A stretch of DNA of 64,000 nucleotides, from positions 186,001-250,000 of the IMG/VR virus record IMGVR_UViG_3300037297_000066; one strand, written 5' to 3'. Below, one piece after another: positions 11,095-31,028 of the stretch. The notes under the pieces were generated by a model. That model saw only the letters and a list, made by a program, of their open reading frames with translations, ran no database searches and had not been told where the DNA came from. The position numbers were made by a program, and so were the translations under genes. Position 1 is the first letter of the stretch, and every line of letters starts with the position of its first letter.

Positions 11095-11125
11095 CGGGCC
11101 CCTTTCAAAAAATCAGAGACGGCTG

Positions 11126-11154
11126 GGTTAAGATCCAACCCTCTCAGGTGTAGT
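11126..11154 (+). promoter_or_regulatory. Class-A promoter 3
   Basis: Motif A, ATG after 6 nt. Confidence 0.8.
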
Positions 11155-11160
11155 GAGATC

Positions 11161-11361
11161 ATGGCATACCCGTACAACAACTGGGCCATCAAGCACGACG
11201 AACTAGGATTCTACGACGGCACCCTCCACGGGAAGCCCTGGTTTGGGGCGGACCAGTATGACGCCCACGGCTACCGGACCCGGAAGGATGCCCAGGCTGT
11301 GATAGACGGGGACCCCGAAGGGTTCAAGAACGCCCGGCCAGTGAACCTGAAGAAGTTGTAG
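11161..11361 (+). CDS. Hypothetical protein (class-A cassette)
   Basis: Motif A start. Confidence 0.8.
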   Translation: MAYPYNNWAIKHDELGFYDGTLHGKPWFGADQYDAHGYRTRKDAQAVIDGDPEGFKNARPVNLKKL

Positions 11362-11524
11362 AGGGAAGCCCTGCTACGGCTCTGCCCAGAGCCTCCCCTA
11401 GGCTACCCTCAGGGAACAGGTCAGCAGCCCAGGCTCCTGCCTCTTGAATCTCAGCTCGAAGGCGACGCTTCCCAGCTGGGGTTCTGAGGTAGGCGGCCAG
11501 GGCCTGTTCTTCTTGTGGAGTCAT
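11324..11524 (-). CDS. Hypothetical protein
   Basis: MTPQEEQALAAYLRTPAGKRRL; last gene of a minus-strand operon. Confidence 0.6.
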   Translation of the reverse strand: MTPQEEQALAAYLRTPAGKRRLRAEIQEAGAWAADLFPEGSLGEALGRAVAGLPSTTSSGSLAGRS

Positions 11525-11530
11525 CTCGAC

Positions 11531-11578
11531 CCAGAGTAGGCCCCCAGGGAGGGGCTGTCTACTCCCTGGGGGCTCTGG
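11531..11578. terminator. Strong intergenic hairpin
   Basis: CCCCCAGGGAG/CTCCCTGGGGG 11-bp stem plus CCAGAG/CTCTGG. Confidence 0.55.
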
Positions 11579-12577: not shown

Positions 12578-12769
12578 TCAGTCCTTCACGACCCGGGGCA
12601 TCATGCGAGCGGTAGCCCCGTACCTTCGGGCACGCTCGTTGGCCTGTTCTAGGGTGAGGCCCCGAGCTGAGATGTAGTGAGGCTCGCCCCCGATTCGGAC
12701 CTCCACGTGGTAGGTGGGCTCCTTGGGCTCCTCGGGGGAGATGTTCTTGGAAGTGTTGTCGGTTGCCAT
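12578..12769 (-). CDS. TYHVE..RGLTL..VVKD family protein
   Basis: Paralogue of 12940 and 13887; motif A start. Confidence 0.8.
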   Translation of the reverse strand: MATDNTSKNISPEEPKEPTYHVEVRIGGEPHYISARGLTLEQANERARRYGATARMMPRVVKD

Positions 12770-12775
12770 GCCCCT

Positions 12776-12804
12776 ATTACACGTGAGGGGGTTGGATCTT
12801 AACC
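12776..12804 (-). promoter_or_regulatory. Class-A promoter 6
   Basis: Motif A; perfect 12-bp hairpin GACCCCCGGGAG just upstream. Confidence 0.8.
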
Positions 12805-12906
12805 CTGAACGTAGTGACCCCCGGGAGTTTCTGAGGCTCCCGGGGGTCGGGGTTCGGAGTTCTAACAGATATACCCCACCATACACCGGAGCTCAGGGTT
12901 TGGAGC

Positions 12907-12943
12907 CAGGTTTTTTGAGGGGTCAGGTTTTTTGAGGGGTCAG
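12907..12943. repeat. 17-bp tandem duplication CAGGTTTTTTGAGGGGT
   Basis: Two adjacent copies at the gene end. Confidence 0.7.
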
Positions 12944-13263
12944 TCCTTCACGACCCAAGCTTTCATGGGATGGTACTTCTGAGCCCACCTCTGGGCCTCT
13001 TCGAGAGTACGCCCCCGAGGGGACACGACGACAGGGTAACTCCTCACATGGATCTCCACGTGAAAGGTGGGCTCTGGAGTGGGGTTCTTCTTGGCTTCCC
13101 ACCGGGCCAGGACGGCCTGGCACCGGGTGCAGTTGACGTGCTCCTTGGCGGACGTGGTGCTGTGAGCTCGTCGGTTCCCACACACGGGCCTTCCTCCCCC
13201 GGTTTGGGAGAAGTGCATCACGAGGCCCTTGCGGGTCTTTTTGCTGGGGGTGCCGGTTGCCAT
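12940..13263 (-). CDS. Zn-finger + VVKD family protein
   Basis: H..CG..CTRC then TFHVE..RGRTLEEA..VVKD. Confidence 0.8.
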   Translation of the reverse strand: MATGTPSKKTRKGLVMHFSQTGGGRPVCGNRRAHSTTSAKEHVNCTRCQAVLARWEAKKNPTPEPTFHVEIHVRSYPVVVSPRGRTLEEAQRWAQKYHPMKAWVVKD

Positions 13264-13269
13264 GCCCCT

Positions 13270-13298
13270 ATTACACGTGAGGGGGGCCGATCTTAACC
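13270..13298 (-). promoter_or_regulatory. Class-A promoter 7
   Basis: Motif A, ATG after 6 nt. Confidence 0.8.
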
Positions 13299-13432
13299 CG
13301 GCCCGTGGGTATAAAAACAGGCCCGACCCGAGACCCGAAGCACCCATAACTCCCCGTATGGGGGCCTCGGATCGGGGGAAAAACGGGGTGAATTTTCGAC
13401 CGGGGTTCGATATCAGAAATAGCCTGGCCCGG

Positions 13433-13461
13433 GGTTAAGATCCGAGGCTCCCAGGTGTATT
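13433..13461 (+). promoter_or_regulatory. Class-A promoter 8
   Basis: Motif A variant (GTGTATT), ATG after 6 nt. Confidence 0.75.
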
Positions 13462-13467
13462 AGGGGC

Positions 13468-13593
13468 ATGAGCAAGAAGACGATGGTCACCCTGGCTTGT
13501 TGGATGCTCGCCCTGGCAACCTCGTCTGCTCAGACACCCCCCAAGGCCCGGACAGTGGAGCTCGAAGCCACCCTGGTTCAGGCCACCCTGTGA
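13468..13593 (+). CDS. 41-aa signal-peptide-like protein (not in ORF track)
   Basis: MSKKTMVTLACWMLALATSSAQ...; motif A start. Confidence 0.65.
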   Translation: MSKKTMVTLACWMLALATSSAQTPPKARTVELEATLVQATL

Positions 13594-13601
13594 GGACCCC
13601 C

Positions 13602-13835
13602 ATGAACGCCTACCTGATTCACAAGGACAAGATGGCCCGGATCGCCTTCCCCGATGACGCCCCTTCCGAGGTAGTGGACCGGATCAAGCGGGCCGTGGCC
13701 TCCCACATGACCCACCCCGATGGGATCCGACGCCCGGAGATGAGGGTGTGTGGGTGCCGGGTCTACTGGGCCTCCCCACTGTACTACTCGGACGTCCCCT
13801 CGGACCGCATCGAGTCGGCCTCGGACTACGTCTGA
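13602..13835 (+). CDS. Hypothetical protein
   Basis: GAGG SD before MNAYLIH. Confidence 0.7.
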   Translation: MNAYLIHKDKMARIAFPDDAPSEVVDRIKRAVASHMTHPDGIRRPEMRVCGCRVYWASPLYYSDVPSDRIESASDYV

Positions 13836-13851
13836 GAATCGCTCCTCTCCG

Positions 13852-13880
13852 GGTTAAGATCCAACCCTCTCAGGTGTAGT
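13852..13880 (+). promoter_or_regulatory. Class-A promoter 9
   Basis: Identical to copies 3, 10, 11. Confidence 0.8.
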
Positions 13881-13886
13881 GAGATC

Positions 13887-14156
13887 ATGGCAAGAAAACC
13901 TCGTCCTGACTGCCCCAACTGTGGGCATTCCCGGTGGACCTACAGGCTGTCCCAGCACTACTGGGCTTGTCAGAGGTGCCATGCCACCTGGGCGACGAAC
14001 GCCTACCAGAACAGGCCCCAAACCTACCACGTGGAGACCCGTCCACGTTACTCCGTCTCCAAGCGGGGGCTCACTCTCGTCGAGGCCCAACACAAGGCCC
14101 GAAAGTACAACTCCACCCATTTCCCCCAAGCCCACGTCGTGAAGGACGCATCATGA
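13887..14156 (+). CDS. Zn-ribbon + VVKD family protein
   Basis: CPNCG..CQRC, TYHVE..RGLTL..VVKD. Confidence 0.8.
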   Translation: MARKPRPDCPNCGHSRWTYRLSQHYWACQRCHATWATNAYQNRPQTYHVETRPRYSVSKRGLTLVEAQHKARKYNSTHFPQAHVVKDAS

Positions 14157-14362
14157 ACAAGAACGAAGTTTGGAAACGCTACCGTCGAGGCGACCACATC
14201 ACGGACCACGAGCTGGAAGTGCTCCTCAAAGACACGAAGCGGGCTCTGGACTCCCTGGTCTACCGGAACGACTACGGAGTCGTCACCCTGGCCCTGGCTG
14301 CGGATGTGGCCGCCCTGGAGGGGTACCAGCGTTCCCGGGAAATCCGGAAGCTCGAAGGCTGA
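14153..14362 (+). CDS. Hypothetical protein
   Basis: ATGA overlap, SD AAGGA. Confidence 0.75.
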   Translation: MNKNEVWKRYRRGDHITDHELEVLLKDTKRALDSLVYRNDYGVVTLALAADVAALEGYQRSREIRKLEG

Positions 14363-14374
14363 GCCCCCTCTCCG

Positions 14375-14403
14375 GGTTAAGATCCAACCCTCTCAGGTGT
14401 AGT
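14375..14403 (+). promoter_or_regulatory. Class-A promoter 10
   Basis: Motif A, ATG after 6 nt. Confidence 0.8.
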
Positions 14404-14409
14404 GAGATC

Positions 14410-14637
14410 ATGGCACAGAACAAGACCCCTGGTGGATTCAAGGTAACCCCCGCCCGTGCTGGGCAACCCCCGGTGGGTTCCAAGGTGGCCGTCAAGGCCC
14501 GAGTCAACCCCCTGGACTGGCCCTACAAGGACCGGGAGGGGACGGTCCTCGGCTACTCGGTCCCCCACGGGTTTGCCGTCCTCTCCTCCCATGGAGAGGA
14601 GCTCCTCATCCACCCCGAGAACCTGGACCTGGTCTGA
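14410..14637 (+). CDS. Small SH3/KOW-like beta protein
   Basis: VGSKVAV..YKDREGTVLG..LIHPENLDLV. Confidence 0.7.
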   Translation: MAQNKTPGGFKVTPARAGQPPVGSKVAVKARVNPLDWPYKDREGTVLGYSVPHGFAVLSSHGEELLIHPENLDLV

Positions 14638-25967: not shown

Positions 25968-26148
25968 CGATGGCCGTGACGCTCAGGTGACCGGTGGGAC
26001 GGTACAGGCGAATCACATCGACAACCCTCCATCGCCCTTGTGTGAAGAGGATCACCTCTCCAATGCGAGGGCTTTCGGGAACGTCGTTGAAGTTATTCAG
26101 GAGAGCTCCATGGGGGGCGTCCATTCGAAATTCTAGGTAGATGCTCAT
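25942..26148 (-). CDS. Small beta protein
   Basis: PRIGEVI..WRVVDV; similar to 46228. Confidence 0.7.
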   Translation of the reverse strand: MSIYLEFRMDAPHGALLNNFNDVPESPRIGEVILFTQGRWRVVDVIRLYRPTGHLSVTAIVKEEFPPD

Positions 26149-26801
26149 TTGAAGAGTTTTTCCTTGAGAGCCTGGATATCGTCGAGGCAGAGGTATCGCT
26201 GACCGTGGAATATAGCAGCTTCTCTATGGTCCTCGGGAAGACACAAAACGTAGTCGATGAAGTCTTTGAGTTGTTTCTTGGGCCGTTTTTCCTTTAGGCC
26301 GTCATCTTCAGTCATCAGAGGCAGCAGCTTGTCGATCTGGTCGAAAACGGGTTTCAGGTCTGGACGCAGGTAAGGAGCGAAGAAGTCTCTACATTGTTGT
26401 TTGACACTCTCTCCTTGGAGGTGGGTGAGGGCCCGTTCGATGATAGCGATGGCTTCTTCGCTGTACATCTTGGAGAGAACGTTTCGTTCAAAGAGACGGG
26501 CCTTGGCGTACTCGGATCTAGACAAAAGAGTGGCCAAGGTAATGGCCTTTTCCTCCCGATCCTCTTCGAGGATTTCTTCCTCGGTCCAGGGGCGAATGAT
26601 GACTTTGACTCGTTGACCGTAAAAGAAGGCTGCCTCCTCCAGTTCCTCTTCGTTCAGGTACATGACGAGGTTCGTGCCTCTGGACACGACCTGCAGTCTT
26701 CCGGCGGCCTTCCTACTGAGGGGGTGTTGGTTGTTCTCGTCCGTACCGATGCTCTTGACGGTGCAGAAATCTAGGGAGATGCCTTTGGTGATGTTTTCCA
26801 T
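26145..26801 (-). CDS. Hypothetical protein
   Basis: ATG 26801 just after the upstream stop. Confidence 0.75.
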   Translation of the reverse strand: MENITKGISLDFCTVKSIGTDENNQHPLSRKAAGRLQVVSRGTNLVMYLNEEELEEAAFFYGQRVKVIIRPWTEEEILEEDREEKAITLATLLSRSEYAKARLFERNVLSKMYSEEAIAIIERALTHLQGESVKQQCRDFFAPYLRPDLKPVFDQIDKLLPLMTEDDGLKEKRPKKQLKDFIDYVLCLPEDHREAAIFHGQRYLCLDDIQALKEKLFK

Positions 26802-26809
26802 GATGGGGG

Positions 26810-27037
26810 CTACTTTCTGCGGACTTGAGCTAAAGTGTCTCGCAGATCTTCGTAGAGTCCCCGTACTTCGGGACTCATTCTTGATCCTCGATTGATCAAA
26901 GCAATGACGGTTTCGGCCTGCAGGATCTCGGCTTGTCTTTGGGTCACCTTGAGGGTCACCTTGTAGACGGTTTGCCGACTGGCCTTGGTTTCGTACTCTC
27001 TGCCCACGGGTGCGGGGTCTGCGAAGTCTTTGCTCAT
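26810..27037 (-). CDS. Hypothetical protein
   Basis: Class-B start. Confidence 0.7.
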   Translation of the reverse strand: MSKDFADPAPVGREYETKASRQTVYKVTLKVTQRQAEILQAETVIALINRGSRMSPEVRGLYEDLRDTLAQVRRK

Positions 27038-27117
27038 ACGCCTCACCATACACCGGGGGGTTGGGTTGACGGCTTGGATTCTGAGTTTTTGGTGTATGGT
27101 GGAAGAAGCGAGGAACG

Positions 27118-27417
27118 ATGCCCAGAAAACCAGTAATCATCTATCGGGAGAGCCTCACGTTACCAGGATTGGTAGGCAATCCCCGATCGAACACTTTGCT
27201 CAAAGCCTTCAACGAGGCATGGGGTTTCCCAGGGGGCGCCTGCCACAAGATTGAGGGAGGCCAGTACGTTGACGCAAAGCCTTTCCCTGAGGGGTTTGAG
27301 GAAGCCCAGGCTCAACTCTACAGATCCGAGCTTGTCTACGTAGAGGTCTCGGTCTACAAAGACGGATCTCGAAAGCTCAAACTCGTGGGCTCTCCGGAGA
27401 GGGATCATGACCGCTAG
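27118..27417 (+). CDS. Hypothetical protein
   Basis: Class-B promoter with short SD leader. Confidence 0.7.
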   Translation: MPRKPVIIYRESLTLPGLVGNPRSNTLLKAFNEAWGFPGGACHKIEGGQYVDAKPFPEGFEEAQAQLYRSELVYVEVSVYKDGSRKLKLVGSPERDHDR

Positions 27418-27787
27418 CCTTCCAGAGACGCTGACTTGGCGGGGACAGACCCTGAAGGATCTCAAGGAAATGAACCCTCAGGTGGGGGTGGAATACGTGG
27501 GGTATGTAGAGAGCTCCAAGATCAGCGTTTATTCGTGGGAGCCGGAGCCGGGTCTGCAGAGGATTTGGTACGCTAACATAGGAGCCTCTGGAACCGCTTA
27601 CGAAGAAGGCGGATGGGAGGCTGCCTTGGAAGAGGCTCTTCGAAGGCACAAAAAAGTCATTGCCAGTCACGAGAAGTTCTTGCAGGAAGCCCGTTGGCTG
27701 CAGGAAGTGTTGGATCCTACTTTCGATCCAAACCCCCCTCCAGAGCTTCCCCCTTTGGCGCCCCCCAAGGACTCGGGAGAGCGTTAG
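27407..27787 (+). CDS. Hypothetical protein
   Basis: LPETLTWRG..EAALEEA. Confidence 0.75.
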   Translation: MTASLPETLTWRGQTLKDLKEMNPQVGVEYVGYVESSKISVYSWEPEPGLQRIWYANIGASGTAYEEGGWEAALEEALRRHKKVIASHEKFLQEARWLQEVLDPTFDPNPPPELPPLAPPKDSGER

Positions 27788-27824
27788 TTCAGGTTGCTGA
27801 AGTATGGGGCAGGCCCTTAGGCCG

Positions 27825-27853
27825 GGTTAAGATCCAGCTCTCTCAGGTGTAAT
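27825..27853 (+). promoter_or_regulatory. Class-A promoter 18
   Basis: Motif A, ATG after 6 nt. Confidence 0.8.
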
Positions 27854-27859
27854 GTAGGC

Positions 27860-28036
27860 ATGGCTAAGAGAAGCAAGAGGCTACCGCCTCACTCACGCCC
27901 TTGTTGTTCGGACCCCCGTCCCGAATACCACAGCAGTTGGAAGGACGAGACGGGTCTTTGTGCCAACTGTGGCCGGAGGTACAGTCCCGGTACGGTGGCC
28001 TACTGGAGGAAGTACCCTCAGGGGCACAAGCGTTAG
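27860..28036 (+). CDS. 58-aa Zn-ribbon protein (not in ORF track)
   Basis: PCCSDP..CANCGRRY; motif A start. Confidence 0.75.
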   Translation: MAKRSKRLPPHSRPCCSDPRPEYHSSWKDETGLCANCGRRYSPGTVAYWRKYPQGHKR

Positions 28037-28114
28037 TTCAGGTTCGGCCCTCAACCTAAAACAGCGGGTCCCCTATTTTAGGTTGCTCAAGTAGCGACCT
28101 GGTGTACAGTGGGG

Positions 28115-28417
28115 GTGAGCAGGGGCTTCTTTTCAGACCTAATTCGGGGTCGTCTCGTGCTAAACGAAGCCCCTGCCAAACCCTTCATGCTGAAGCTACT
28201 GGAGAAGACGGTTGAAGCCCTCACAGGGGAGCCTGTAGAGGTCCTCAGGGCTCGGAGCCTGGAGGAGGGTCGTAGGCTGGCGGAGCTACGGAACGGGGCT
28301 CCTATGCGATTCTCGGGGGATCCAGAGGGTGTCATCCTTACCCACGAGAGGGTTGAGGCTGATTTGGACCGAGCTCTGGACCAAGATCCGCGTTTTGTGG
28401 ATCTTGGTGTACGGTAG
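28115..28417 (+). CDS. Hypothetical protein
   Basis: GTG after GGTGTACAGT. Confidence 0.65.
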   Translation: MSRGFFSDLIRGRLVLNEAPAKPFMLKLLEKTVEALTGEPVEVLRARSLEEGRRLAELRNGAPMRFSGDPEGVILTHERVEADLDRALDQDPRFVDLGVR

Positions 28418-28421
28418 GGGA

Positions 28422-28539
28422 GGCAGGGCCCTAGGGCTTTGGCAATCGGCTCCCGGGCTCCAACCCCGGGGGCCTTCTTCCGGGGGTCCTGCCACTAAAC
28501 TCCCCCGGTGTGTTGAGGACCTATCAGGGGGAGATTTTT
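28422..28539 (+). ncRNA. Candidate sRNA: promoter, stem and terminator
   Basis: GGTGTACGGT places +1 on the first base of stem GGCAGGGCCCT/GGGGTCCTGCC; second hairpin then TTTTT. Confidence 0.6.
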
Positions 28540-28548
28540 CAAGGTTCG

Positions 28549-28577
28549 GGTTAAGATCCGGCTCCCTCACGTGTAGT
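28549..28577 (+). promoter_or_regulatory. Class-A promoter 19
   Basis: Motif A, ATG after 6 nt. Confidence 0.8.
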
Positions 28578-28583
28578 AGGTAC

Positions 28584-28736
28584 ATGACGCAATATCCCGA
28601 AGCAATTCCTGGTGAGAGCCGTTACGTTGACTTCGACGAGGAGACCCAGTGCTGGGGCATCTTTGGAGAGGACAGCGGACACTGCTACGAGTTGTACAGT
28701 GACAGGCAGGAGGCTCGGGACCGGCTGCAATCGTAG
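28584..28736 (+). CDS. 50-aa acidic protein
   Basis: Motif A start. Confidence 0.75.
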   Translation: MTQYPEAIPGESRYVDFDEETQCWGIFGEDSGHCYELYSDRQEARDRLQS

Positions 28737-28747
28737 GATCATGGGCC

Positions 28748-28789
28748 GAGGGGTCCTTCTGGCTTCTTCATTCCCCAGAGGGGCCCCTC
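28748..28789 (+). terminator. 15-bp hairpin after the gene
   Basis: GAGGGGTCCTTCTGG/CCAGAGGGGCCCCTC, loop CTTCTTCATTCC. Confidence 0.55.
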
Positions 28790-28816
28790 TCCCACCACCT
28801 CCAAGAAAGGGTACAA

Positions 28817-29176
28817 GTGGCGCGTAAACACTTGATGCGTGTGGTTTTGAAAGAAGCTGGGCCGGTGGATCTCTACGGAGAGAAAGAGCTGTCGGTCGCT
28901 GACTACAGCCAGCTGTCGCAGATCGCCAAGACTCTTCAGGACGGAGGAGTCCAGTTCAAGGTGAAGCTGACAGATCCGAACATGGAGGTGTGGGTGCCGT
29001 CAGCCCAACAGTTTGTCGAGGCTCTCAGCTTGGTTGGTGACCCGAAGGCGGTTCTGGCTCAGGTCCAGTCGGTTATAGAGGGGCCTGCTTGCTCTGGTAG
29101 CGGGCCCCAATGCCCGGAGATGATGAGTAGGTTGGGCCGGTACCGTAGGCAGCACAGAAGCAAGGCGGCCAAGTAG
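28817..29176 (+). CDS. Hypothetical protein
   Basis: 119 aa; purine-rich SD. Confidence 0.7.
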   Translation: MARKHLMRVVLKEAGPVDLYGEKELSVADYSQLSQIAKTLQDGGVQFKVKLTDPNMEVWVPSAQQFVEALSLVGDPKAVLAQVQSVIEGPACSGSGPQCPEMMSRLGRYRRQHRSKAAK

Positions 29177-29237
29177 ACAGGGCTGTCCCCTGATCCCCTC
29201 CAGCTTTAAGCTTCAACCTCCTAACTGGAACAGGTCC

Positions 29238-29597
29238 ATGGGCAAAACAAGGATAGACTATCACGGTGGGGCGTCGAAAGAGGTATCCACCAAGGTTTGG
29301 TACCTAGAGGATATCCCCGACACTACCTTTTACCGTCAGCTGGAAGAGAGGGTTCGTCCGTTGGTGTACGTCCTACGTCAGCACGGTATCAACACTGAGA
29401 GCTCCTGTCACCACAGGGGGTACATTCAAGTTGATGGGAGTGCGTTCTCAAACAACGTCCATTTTTCTAGGGAGCTGTACTTCGCAATGTACGAGGTTAA
29501 CTGCCTACCCTACAACGTTCGGTGTGAACGGTACGTGGATGAGACGGGCCACTTCCACGAGATTTGCCGTATCCAGAGCGAGTTGTTGAAGATTTGA
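29238..29597 (+). CDS. Hypothetical protein (RPLV..L..G..T.SSC motif)
   Basis: Recurrent phage motif. Confidence 0.7.
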   Translation: MGKTRIDYHGGASKEVSTKVWYLEDIPDTTFYRQLEERVRPLVYVLRQHGINTESSCHHRGYIQVDGSAFSNNVHFSRELYFAMYEVNCLPYNVRCERYVDETGHFHEICRIQSELLKI

Positions 29598-29632
29598 GGC
29601 TCGTGTTCCAACCTCTCGGTGTATGGTGGGGC

Positions 29633-30499
29633 ATGCAGATCCGACAACTGAGCTACGAAGAAGCCGTCGAACGTCACCCCGAGCAGGTGCAAGCCATCAT
29701 CACGAAGCTCCGCAAGAGCAGGAGCAAGTCGAAGGAAACAGCCCCCGAGGCCATGAAGTGGAGCTACGAGTGTTCCGTCACGATTGAGGGCTCTGGACGC
29801 CTTGATCAGGTCTTGGCGGCATCTCAACGTATAAAGAGCATGTCCACGGAGGAGCAGATTGCTGACGAAGTGCGCCGGACTCACACCGCACTTTCAGGAT
29901 CGGCTGGGAGATGGGGATGGTCTGAGAAGGTTCCCAACCCTCCTGAGGTAGAGGAGAGGGTCAGAGCTCATTTCCGGGAGCGTGAAGAAGATCAGAAGAA
30001 GATGGATCAGATGTCCCCTGAGGAGCGGGAAGAGAGCTTCCAGGCGACTTTGGGAGCCTTCTTTGGGGGAGGGGGTGTGGCCCTCACCATGGGAGGGGGT
30101 GGCCGGGCCCAACTTTCTCGAACCCCTGAGGAGTTCAACCAGGCTCAGCAAAGGGGGCCCGGGGTGGGGGCCTTGAATCCGGATTTCGATGGGGAACCGG
30201 AGACGCTCAACTTTTTCGGAGTCGAGCTGACGTTGAACCAGCAAGCCTACCCGCAGGTAGCTTTCTGGGAGGGAACGTTGGATACGGGACCAGCGAGTCA
30301 AATCCGTGTCAAGCTGGAAAAGTTCCCTGAAAATCCCCTCATTCCTCGATATGCTGTGCTAGTTTCCTTCAAAGGGAAAACCCCTGCTCAGGTCTTCCAC
30401 ATGACATCCACTGGGAACTCTTGGGAGGATCTGCAGGAGCGATTCCGAAGTCAGGCTCAAGAGATTTCTAGAACTCTCAAGGTTCTCTGCGGGGAGTAG
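29633..30499 (+). CDS. Hypothetical protein
   Basis: Class-B start; PETLNFFG segment similar to 33908. Confidence 0.8.
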   Translation: MQIRQLSYEEAVERHPEQVQAIITKLRKSRSKSKETAPEAMKWSYECSVTIEGSGRLDQVLAASQRIKSMSTEEQIADEVRRTHTALSGSAGRWGWSEKVPNPPEVEERVRAHFREREEDQKKMDQMSPEEREESFQATLGAFFGGGGVALTMGGGGRAQLSRTPEEFNQAQQRGPGVGALNPDFDGEPETLNFFGVELTLNQQAYPQVAFWEGTLDTGPASQIRVKLEKFPENPLIPRYAVLVSFKGKTPAQVFHMTSTGNSWEDLQERFRSQAQEISRTLKVLCGE

Positions 30500-30556
30500 G
30501 CCGAGGCTTCTCAACCTACGGACATTCTGGTTGTGGGTTCAGAGTCGGCATATACC

Positions 30557-30845: not shown

Positions 30846-31028
30846 ATGGCGGGAGACGACTCCAAACAGCTTCAAGAGGCTATCGACCATTGTTTGGAGA
30901 AAGCCAAGGGTGGGAGCAAGTGTGCTCAAGATCACGCTCAGCTAGCCTACTGGCTCATCGAGCTTCGAGAATGCAGAAAGGTATCTGGGAATGGCAACCG
31001 GCGTAGGACTGATTCTTCAGGAACGTAA
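30846..31028 (+). CDS. Small phage protein
   Basis: EAIDHC..CAQDHAQLAYWLIEL. Confidence 0.7.
   Translation: MAGDDSKQLQEAIDHCLEKAKGGSKCAQDHAQLAYWLIELRECRKVSGNGNRRRTDSSGT

What the first reader, a model, noticed from the sequence alone, without database searches (positions are those of the whole stretch)
27780..28044. Class-A cassette flanked by a 16-bp direct repeat: possible insertion footprint
Seen: AGCGTTAGTTCAGGTT at 27780-27795 and 28029-28044, each containing a gene's TAG stop, brackets promoter 18 plus a 58-aa Zn-ribbon gene missing from the ORF track. Inference: target duplication or Campbell-type integration of a promoter+gene circle, i.e. evidence that cassettes move.
Basis: partly seen in the sequence, partly recalled or inferred. 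Interest (0 to 1): 0.65.

Follow-up and report, generated by a model that had tools for sequence, protein, structure and literature searches.

The report
Repeat-flanked promoter-gene cassette in huge phage
A small promoter-plus-gene module in a 437-kb phage is bracketed by a real, non-random direct repeat that is probably the scar of an old duplication or circle-type recombination, but every known relative already carries it, so its movement is inferred and not seen.

Summary
AGCGTTAGTTCAGGTT occurs exactly twice in the 437-kb phage genome, at window 27780-27795 and 28029-28044. Each copy holds a TAG stop, in the same frame. The repeat is longer than reported: a 25-bp unit whose second copy is split by 35 bp. 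It brackets a leaderless class-A promoter and a real but unannotated 58-aa CC/CxxC gene with homologues in other huge phages.

No empty site was found. Six independent assemblies, representing three lineages at 92-100% identity, all carry the cassette and both exact 16-mers. Any event therefore predates their split.

A transposon-type target duplication is unlikely. There are no terminal inverted repeats and no recombinase. The coding half of the repeat (K-R-stop) is native to the gene58 family. The other half resembles the upstream patch of other class-A promoters. The repeat reads best as a cassette-to-cassette junction from a tandem or circular form.

Cassettes do turn over in this phage. 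A module between two identical 49-bp promoter copies is missing, with a single promoter copy left, in one sister strain. A roughly 470-bp module is absent from three others. This resembles PeSL shuffling in T4-type phages.

The parts
27407..27787 (+). gene126. It is an ORFan of 126 aa found only in this phage lineage. Its last two codons and TAG stop lie inside the upstream repeat copy.
   Evidence: ORF list. The only cluster has 3 members, all from close strains. No Pfam or PHROG match. No homologue in the other huge phage G001.
27780..27804 (+). Upstream repeat copy S1. It is the 16-mer (27780-27795) followed directly by GCTGAAGTA, giving an intact 25-bp unit. Proposed to be a cassette 3'-end to cassette 5'-end junction.
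   Evidence: It is exact in L009. In L010 only position 27796, just after the 16-mer, differs.
27805..27859 (+). Class-A promoter region. It comprises a G-run and small GGCC/GGCC hairpin spacer, GGTTAAGATCC (27825-27835), a conserved spacer, and a GGTGTA/TAATGT -10-like element (27846-27855). The ATG follows 4 nt later, so the mRNA would be leaderless.
   Evidence: 15 copies in the window against 0.02 expected. 42 copies of the core GTTAAGATC genome-wide, about 40 of them with the full promoter context; most have an ATG start a few nt after the -10-like box, though some do not. Function as a promoter is inferred from the pattern, not measured.
27860..28036 (+). gene58. It is a 58-aa protein with invariant C15, C16, P19, D29, C34 and C37 (PCC..P..EYHSSWKDETGxCxNCG motif). 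It is unannotated in all assemblies and is a putative small zinc-binding protein.
   Evidence: 59-63% identical homologue in huge phage G001. 15 representative homologues with E<1e-3 among 1.8 billion proteins. Alignment A1. Intact in L009 and L010, with 5 synonymous and 3 non-synonymous codon changes in L010. Single copy in the genome. The AlphaFold model is low-confidence, pLDDT 61, so the fold is unconfirmed.
28029..28044 (+). Downstream 16-mer copy S2. It carries gene58's own K-R-stop.
   Evidence: The closest homologues end K-R-stop (P0012, DNA AAACGTTAAT) and K-T-stop (G001) at the same position, give or take one codon.
28045..28079 (+). 35-bp interruption of the second repeat copy, flanked by AGGTT on both sides. 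It contains an inverted copy (AACCTAAAA) of the following TTTTAGGTT. It is either an insertion here or was deleted from the upstream copy.
   Evidence: (I4). The RNA fold is not better than shuffles, z -1.2. Present in L009 and L010 with one shared A-to-G change.
28080..28093 (+). Second half of the downstream repeat copy (S3), AGGTTGCTCAAGTA. It matches 27791-27804 at 13 of 14 positions.
   Evidence: these are the only two such sites in the genome at 1 mismatch or fewer.
28101..28417 (+). General-class promoter (GGTGTACAGTGG, 28101-28112) and the next gene, gene102. The gene is 102 aa if GTG 28109 is used. It is more likely 76 aa starting at ATG 28187, after a leader hairpin with 22-nt arms (82% complementary, 28112-28183).
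   Evidence: The promoter motif occurs 98 times in the genome against 4 in a shuffle, with ATG 5-7 nt after the hexamer. Hairpin I1. JGI calls the 76-aa form. The distant relative L044 aligns only from about 28207.

Best explanation
The 16-mer is the intact part of an originally 25-bp or longer direct repeat. That repeat brackets a 224-bp module: a phage-specific leaderless class-A promoter plus a 58-aa CC/CxxC protein gene.

The repeat is not duplicated target DNA. Its first half is the native 3' end of gene58 (K-R-stop). Its second half, GCTGAAGTA followed by a G-run, looks like the A/T patch and G-run that precede other class-A promoters. The upstream copy is therefore a junction of a cassette 3' end to a cassette 5' end. 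Such a junction exists only when the module is tandemly repeated or circular.

Most likely a slightly longer-than-unit copy (about 1.1 units of a 249-bp unit) was laid down between gene126 and gene102 by illegitimate recombination. Its source would have been a tandem array or a promoter-to-promoter excised mini-circle. Alternatively, an in-situ tandem array was trimmed down to this. Either way gene126 was given a borrowed stop codon. The event is older than the divergence of all sampled strains.

Shown: the repeat and its extent, its uniqueness, its conservation, the cassette-native character of its coding half, and cassette turnover elsewhere in the genome.

Inferred: the duplicative event, its direction, and the circular or tandem intermediate.
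For: - The 16-mer is exact and unique and lies far beyond chance. It extends to a split 25-mer.
- gene58's terminal K-R-stop is shared with its closest homologue P0012 (...DDKR stop) and aligns with K-T-stop in G001. The downstream copy therefore belongs to gene58.
- Several class-A promoters are preceded by an A/T patch plus GGGG, as seen after the upstream copy. Examples are genome positions 207531, 228584 and 183791.
- The cassette has no inverted termini. No recombinase domain appears in it or in 8 neighbouring proteins.
- The gene58 family sits in quite different contexts elsewhere. It lies directly after IF3 in G001 and in L034, and in an unrelated small-gene block in L043. G000 has no IF3 gene.
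- gene58 is the best-conserved of only 39 ORFs shared by G000 and G001.
- Tandem or promoter-flanked modules and their loss are documented in the same genome. Identical 49-bp promoter copies at 13844-13892 and 14367-14415 flank a module that is absent, with one promoter copy left, in L038. A module at about 11114-11578 is absent from L036, L038 and L041.
Against: - No empty site, circle or tandem form of this cassette was found. All relatives carry it.
- The claim that the coding half is native rests on two or three homologues and a 2-codon match.
- The resemblance of the second half to class-A upstream patches is qualitative only.
- The second half also lies 8-21 nt upstream of the gene102 promoter, so it could equally be native there.
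- 28 other class-A cassettes show no such flank repeat. The proposed mechanism has therefore left no second example.
- Two events may be needed for the in-situ version: duplication followed by trimming.
Confidence: 0.45

Rival explanations
1. Classical target-site duplication, or site-specific (att-type) integration into recipient sequence. On this reading the 16-25 bp repeat was originally the single junction between gene126 and gene102's promoter and was duplicated when the cassette entered.
For: The topology fits: repeat, then module, then repeat, with the upstream copy providing gene126's stop and the downstream half adjoining gene102's promoter. Other indels in this lineage are flanked by 5-6 bp repeats located at start or stop codons: TCAGA, AATGGC, ATCATG and GTAGG.
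Against: The coding part of the repeat matches the native C-terminus of the gene58 family. There are no terminal inverted repeats and no transposase or integrase in or near the cassette. From general knowledge, 16-25 bp is longer than usual transposon duplications. No empty site was found.
Confidence: 0.12
2. Short-patch gene conversion or copy-choice between the two nearby 3' ends. On this reading both genes were already adjacent, and about 25 bp was copied from one intergenic junction to the other. No cassette moved.
For: Both 16-mers stay identical in L010 although the surrounding DNA is 5-10% diverged. This fits ongoing homogenisation. Identical 42-49-bp promoter copies elsewhere suggest conversion or recent copying is active in this genome.
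Against: Zero changes in 32 nt at this level of divergence is not significant, with P around 0.1. Conversion needs pre-existing similarity, and none is visible beyond the repeat. It does not explain why the patch ends exactly at a cassette boundary.
Confidence: 0.2
3. The repeat is a functional signal kept by selection at both gene ends, for example a protein-binding, RNA-processing or termination-related site, and is not a recombination scar.
For: Both copies are exactly conserved in all strains. The upstream copy forms a small TTCAG/CTGAA hairpin.
Against: There are only two copies in 437 kb. Folding is no better than shuffles, z -0.15 and -1.2. The hairpin is not shared by the second copy. 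There is no Rfam match and no terminator-like site. The positions just after the 16-mer mutate freely in L010.
Confidence: 0.13
4. Chance coincidence of two similar gene ends.
For: Both genes end in R-stop, and the genome is moderately GC-biased.
Against: An exact 16-mer within 250 bp is expected roughly 0.005 times per 64-kb window (my arithmetic). Genome shuffles never exceed 15 nt. The additional 13-of-14 match nearby has a chance expectation near 1e-5.
Confidence: 0.01

Closest known systems
PeSL (promoter-early stem-loop) regulatory cassettes and mini-circles of T4-type phages (Arbiol et al. 2010, PMC2839356; Comeau et al. 2014, PMC4122927)
   Same: A highly conserved phage promoter motif is repeated about 40 times in front of small, mostly ORFan genes in a plastic region. 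Close strains differ by whole promoter-gene modules. At least one indel has its breakpoint inside two identical promoter copies (window 13844-14415 versus L038). That is the topology that yields PeSL mini-circles.
   Different: The phage is an unrelated 437-kb, 55% GC genome. The promoter is a different, leaderless type. A terminator stem-loop accompanies only some copies: it is present before 28549 and absent before 27825. The repeat flanking this particular cassette is not the promoter but a gene-end/promoter-upstream junction. No circles were observed.
Phage morons (promoter-gene-terminator units inserted between conserved genes)
   Same: It is an autonomous small transcription unit lying between two other genes. 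The gene family appears in unrelated genomic contexts in other phages.
   Different: There is no compositional anomaly: gene58 is 59% GC against 56% for the window. There is no terminator of its own. It is fixed in all sampled strains.
Transposon or casposon target-site duplications and integron attC cassettes
   Same: Direct repeats bracket a small inserted unit.
   Different: There are no inverted termini, no transposase, Cas1 or IntI, and no attC-like fold. The cassette carries its own promoter. The repeat looks cassette-derived, not target-derived.

Membership tests
PeSL-type promoter cassette shuffling | A conserved early-type promoter motif repeated many times next to small non-essential ORFs in plastic regions | tested here: met
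   15 copies in the window against 0.02 expected. 42 copies of the core motif genome-wide, about 40 with the full promoter context, most preceding short ORFs.
PeSL-type promoter cassette shuffling | A stem-loop terminator physically coupled to the promoter | tested here: inconclusive
   A strong hairpin plus T-run lies at about 28500-28540, just before the promoter at 28549. No terminator-like site lies before the promoter at 27825.
PeSL-type promoter cassette shuffling | Indels between close relatives with breakpoints inside the repeated motif | tested here: met
   Met for the module between the 49-bp promoter copies at 13844-13892 and 14367-14415, where L038 has a single copy. Not met for the gene58 cassette itself, which is present in all strains.
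PeSL-type promoter cassette shuffling | Circular excision products (mini-circles) | not testable with these tools
Transposable element with target-site duplication | Terminal inverted repeats and a transposase or recombinase | tested here: not met
   No inverted repeat at the cassette ends. The only ORF is the 58-aa protein. Neither it nor 8 neighbours has a Pfam or PHROG recombinase match.
Transposable element with target-site duplication | The repeat is a single copy at an unoccupied site | tested here: inconclusive
   No unoccupied site was found in five related assemblies or in two collection scans. Absence of evidence only.
Campbell-type site-specific integration | An identical core sequence on both sides of the inserted element | tested here: met
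   Exact 16-mer on both sides, 25 bp with the split half.
Campbell-type site-specific integration | A cognate integrase and a free circular form | tested here: not met
   No integrase domain in the neighbourhood. The circular form is not testable.
Integron gene cassette | A promoterless ORF followed by a structured attC site, with IntI nearby | tested here: not met
   The cassette has its own promoter. The 3' region folds no better than shuffles. No integrase was found.
Zinc-ribbon protein (for gene58) | Two Cys pairs (zinc knuckles) on a small beta fold | tested here: inconclusive
   C15, C16, C34 and C37 are invariant (CC...CxxC), and position 23 is His in 12 of the 16 aligned sequences, Cys in 2 and Tyr or Phe in 2. 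The Pfam match is only a sub-threshold NinF hit, E 0.016. The AlphaFold model has pLDDT 61, too poor for a fold search.

The most novel reading that the evidence does not exclude
In this huge phage the leaderless class-A promoter-gene modules travel as very small circles (about 250-500 bp) or tandem units. They are excised by promoter-to-promoter recombination and re-inserted as slightly longer-than-unit copies. The 25-bp junction repeat around gene58 would be the first preserved integration footprint of such a circle. That would make this a PeSL-like gene-shuffling system in a lineage and promoter class unrelated to T4. The gene58 family could be a mobile translation-related factor, since it is linked to IF3 in two other phage contigs.
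Probability: 0.2. Interest if true: 0.6.

Novelty: new member of a known kind. Interest (0 to 1): 0.35.

Why it matters
Huge phages carry hundreds of small ORFan genes, and how these are acquired and shuffled is poorly documented. This locus and its sister strains show promoter-gene modules being gained and lost at promoter repeats and at short homologies located on start or stop codons. The same process was described for T4-type phages, here in an unrelated 437-kb phage with leaderless transcription units. The gene58 repeat would be a rare fossil of the tandem or circular intermediate. It also exposes a conserved small zinc-protein gene that every gene caller missed.

Tried and rejected
- Phage GenBank megablast of 26000-30000: no match.
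- IMG/VR protein-pattern scans with gene126 and gene102: nothing. With gene58: one distant phage, G001.
- Word-index protein searches. gene58 found nothing. gene126 found only its own cluster. gene102 found its own cluster plus one 959-bp contig that starts inside the gene and so does not reach the cassette.
- Exact-pattern scans for the gene126 end plus the 16-mer, in metagenome and viral contigs: only the already known L009 contig.
- Pfam and PHROG scans of gene58 and 8 neighbours: nothing above threshold.
- Rfam: nothing.
- Terminator and sigma-70 promoter scan: nothing relevant.
- RNA folds of both repeat regions: not significant.
- Search for further similarity beyond the repeats, between 27805-27860 and 28094-28180: not better than shuffles, with 149 of 500 shuffles at least as good. 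A gapped local alignment found only the 16-mer.
- Test for a general flank-repeat footprint in 28 other class-A cassettes: negative.
- Base composition of gene58 against its neighbours: no anomaly.
- AlphaFold of gene58 with 16 sequences: pLDDT 61, so I ran no fold search.
- No alternative genetic code was needed or used.

Full report
**What the window is.** The window is bases 186001-250000 of a 437,331-bp IMG/VR virus record with direct terminal repeats. It has 55% GC. It is a huge phage with no close relative in GenBank phages.

**Checking the observation.**
- The 16-mer AGCGTTAGTTCAGGTT is exact at 27780-27795 and 28029-28044.
- These are the only two copies in the genome, even at 2 mismatches.
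- Shuffled genomes never give a close repeat longer than 15 nt. My own estimate for an exact 16-mer pair within 300 bp is about 0.005 per 64-kb window.
- Each copy holds a TAG stop in the same register. These are the stops of gene126 (27407..27787) and of a 58-aa ORF (27860..28036).
- Between the copies lies one class-A promoter. Its elements are GGTTAAGATCC at 27825-27835, a conserved spacer, and GGTGTAATGT at 27846-27855. The ATG follows 4 nt after the -10-like hexamer.

**The repeat is longer than reported.**
- AGGTTGCTSAAGTA occurs at 27791-27804 and 28080-28093 and nowhere else in the genome.
- The upstream copy is therefore an intact 25-mer (27780-27804).
- The downstream copy is the same 25-mer, matching at 24 of 25 positions, split by 35 bp (28045-28079).
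- That 35-bp piece is itself flanked by AGGTT on both sides and contains an inverted copy of the adjacent TTTTAGGTT.
- Nothing further is similar on either side.

**The gene is real.**
- No gene caller reported it, and the exact protein is absent from the 15-billion-protein collection.
- It has a 59-63% identical homologue in another huge phage, G001 (458.7 kb, 39.5% GC).
- It has 15 representative relatives with E<1e-3 among 1.8 billion proteins.
- The alignment shows invariant C15, C16, P19, D29, C34 and C37 within a PCC..P..EYHSSWKDETGxCxNCG motif.
- It is intact in diverged strains, with 5 synonymous and 3 non-synonymous codon changes in L010.
- It is single-copy in the genome.
- The zinc-ribbon label is plausible but unproven. 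Pfam gives only a sub-threshold hit, and the AlphaFold model is poor at pLDDT 61.
- In G001 and in contig L034 the homologue sits directly downstream of an IF3 gene. In L043 it sits among unrelated small genes. G000 has no IF3 gene.
- G000 and G001 share only 39 ORFs, at a median of 37.5% identity among those aligned over at least 60% of their length. gene58 is the most similar of these.
- The family has therefore changed genomic context over evolutionary time.

**Search for an empty site.**
- Exact-protein look-ups recovered six assemblies covering this region.
- Three are 100% identical: the parent contig, a Logan contig and a JGI contig.
- L009 is a mosaic strain, about 98.5% identical around the cassette.
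- L010 is evenly about 92% identical.
- The sixth is an ENA contig for which only gene positions are available.
- All show the same spacing between gene126 and gene102.
- The assemblies with sequence carry the cassette and both exact 16-mers.
- Pattern scans of the metagenome and viral collections for the gene126 end plus the 16-mer returned only L009's contig.
- More distant homologues of gene126 do not exist in the searched collections.
- The single more distant gene102 contig begins inside the gene, so it does not reach the cassette.
- If the cassette was inserted, the event predates all sampled strains.

**Whose sequence is the repeat?** Two observations argue that it belongs to the cassette and not to the target.
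- First, the downstream copy's coding part (AAG CGT TAG, K-R-stop) matches the native C-terminus of the family. The closest homologue ends ...DDKR-stop with DNA AAACGTTAAT. The G001 homologue ends K-T-stop within one codon of the same position.
- Second, the other half of the repeat and the following G-run (GCTGAAGTA TGGGG) resemble the A/T patch plus G-run found just upstream of several other class-A promoters. This second point is qualitative.
- If both hold, the upstream 25-mer joins a cassette 3' end to a cassette 5' end. That arrangement exists only in a tandem array or a circle.
- Formally, 27780-28093 is then about 1.1 units of a 249-bp unit. gene126 is fused to it at GGGAG|AGCGT, and the gene102 promoter region is fused at AAGTA|GCGACC.
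- A transposon-type target duplication is disfavoured. There are no inverted termini and no recombinase in or around the cassette. The repeat length is also unusual for such elements, from general knowledge.
- A functional-signal reading is weak. There are only two copies, no significant structure, no Rfam or terminator match, and free mutation immediately beside the 16-mer in L010.
- Short-patch conversion cannot be excluded.

**Do cassettes move in this phage? Yes, at other sites.**
- The class-A core motif occurs 42 times genome-wide, about 40 of them with the full promoter context, mostly in front of short ORFs with an ATG a few nt after the -10-like box.
- A second, general promoter motif GGTGTAyrGTrG occurs 98 times against 4 in a shuffle. 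Its ATG lies 5-7 nt after the hexamer. Transcription units in this phage are therefore typically leaderless.
- Comparison with sister-strain contigs gives four clean cases:
  1. Identical 49-bp promoter copies at 13844-13892 and 14367-14415 flank an 89-aa and a 69-aa gene. L038 has one promoter copy and no module.
  2. A roughly 470-bp module at about 11114-11578 is present only in G000 and its near-identical strain. It holds a class-A promoter, a 66-aa gene and a convergent 66-aa gene. It is absent from L036, L038 and L041. TCAGA lies at both ends.
  3. The 89-aa gene alone is missing in L041, with ATCATG at the junction.
  4. A 145-bp segment at 30846-30990 is absent in L009. AATGGC, containing the start codon, lies at both ends.
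- In addition, a 1.77-kb three-gene block (28738-30505) is replaced by about 68 bp in L009, with GTAGG (a stop codon plus G) at both borders.
- By contrast, in 28 other class-A cassettes the upstream and downstream flanks share no more than 8 nt, the random level. The 16/25-mer is therefore unique to gene58 and is not a general footprint.

**Comparison with known systems.**
- The behaviour matches the PeSL regulatory cassettes of T4-type phages. There, recombination between repeated early promoter and stem-loop units shuffles ORFans and yields mini-circles (PMC2839356; PMC4122927).
- Shared features are the repeated promoter, the small ORFans, the strain-level module indels and a breakpoint inside promoter copies.
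- Differences are the phage lineage, the leaderless promoter type and the inconsistent presence of a terminator.
- For this cassette specifically, the flanking repeat is a gene-end/promoter-upstream junction and not the promoter itself.
- Circles were not tested.

**Verdict.**
A duplicative recombination scar is the best reading (confidence about 0.45). The circle or tandem version is favoured over target-site duplication.
- No unoccupied site or circle was found, and the locus is fixed in all known relatives.
- The broader claim that cassettes move is shown, but by other loci.
- This is a new member of a known kind (promoter-cassette modular shuffling), of moderate interest.

Noticed in passing
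window 13844-14415 (genome 199844-200415): Two identical 49-bp class-A promoter copies flank an 89-aa plus 69-aa gene module. Sister strain L038 has a single promoter copy and lacks the module. L041 lacks only the 89-aa gene, with the junction at ATCATG. This is a clean promoter-mediated cassette indel.
   Followed up: yes
window ~11114-11578: A roughly 470-bp module is present only in G000 and its 99.8%-identical strain, and is absent from L036, L038 and L041. It holds a class-A promoter identical over 42 bp to those at 13851 and 14374, a 66-aa gene, and a convergent 66-aa gene that has a 58% homologue in G001. TCAGA lies at both ends.
   Followed up: yes
window 30846-30990 and 28738-30505: A 145-bp segment carrying a small ORF between a promoter and the next gene's ATG is absent in L009. 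AATGGC lies at both ends. A 1.77-kb three-gene block is replaced by about 68 bp in L009, with GTAGG at both borders.
   Followed up: partly
whole genome; many sites in the window, e.g. 27091, 27054(-), 28101, 29618: A second, general promoter-like motif GGTGTAyrGTrG occurs 98 times against 4 in a shuffle. An ATG lies 5-7 nt after the hexamer, implying mostly leaderless mRNAs. Divergent pairs of the motif sit back to back, for example at 27044-27054 and 27091-27101.
   Followed up: partly
window 28406-28545: A general-class promoter motif at 28406 is followed not by an ORF but by a roughly 130-nt strongly structured stretch (-66 kcal/mol, z -2.3) ending in a hairpin plus T-run. It is a candidate small RNA or an elaborate terminator. 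The more distant contig L044 has a 153-aa gene at this place instead.
   Followed up: no
window 28112-28183: A hairpin with 22-nt arms (82% complementary) lies between the gene102 promoter and ATG 28187. gene102 is therefore probably a 76-aa protein with a structured leader, not the 102-aa GTG-started ORF.
   Followed up: no
genome 99.6-101.4 kb and 109.2-111.0 kb (outside the window): Arrays of a roughly 36-nt repeat (GTCGAGGGAGG...CCCTCGGGAGTTCCAA) recur at about 72-74 bp spacing. These are CRISPR-like arrays carried by the phage.
   Followed up: no
genome 279-290 kb (outside the window): Clustered short repeats have tRNA T-arm-like sequences such as GGTTCGAATCC, suggesting a tRNA gene cluster. 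I did not check this with ARAGORN.
   Followed up: no
window 12578-14156: A paralogous family of small class-A cassette genes shares a C-terminal ...YHVE...RGLTLEEA...VVKD domain with different N-terminal Cys-rich parts (63, ~107 and 89 aa). This indicates local cassette duplication and divergence.
   Followed up: no
L003:5456-6686 (G001) and L034:135-828: In two other phage contigs the gene58 homologue lies immediately after a phage-encoded IF3 gene. In G001 it is followed by a peptide deformylase gene with a SEC-C-like tail. This hints at a translation-related role for this small Cys-rich protein.
   Followed up: partly
window 26116-26415 and 26716-27015: L009 is about 98.5% identical to the window except for two hot patches with 30-40% differences. 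This mosaicism points to recent recombination between strains inside the 331-aa minus-strand gene region.
   Followed up: no
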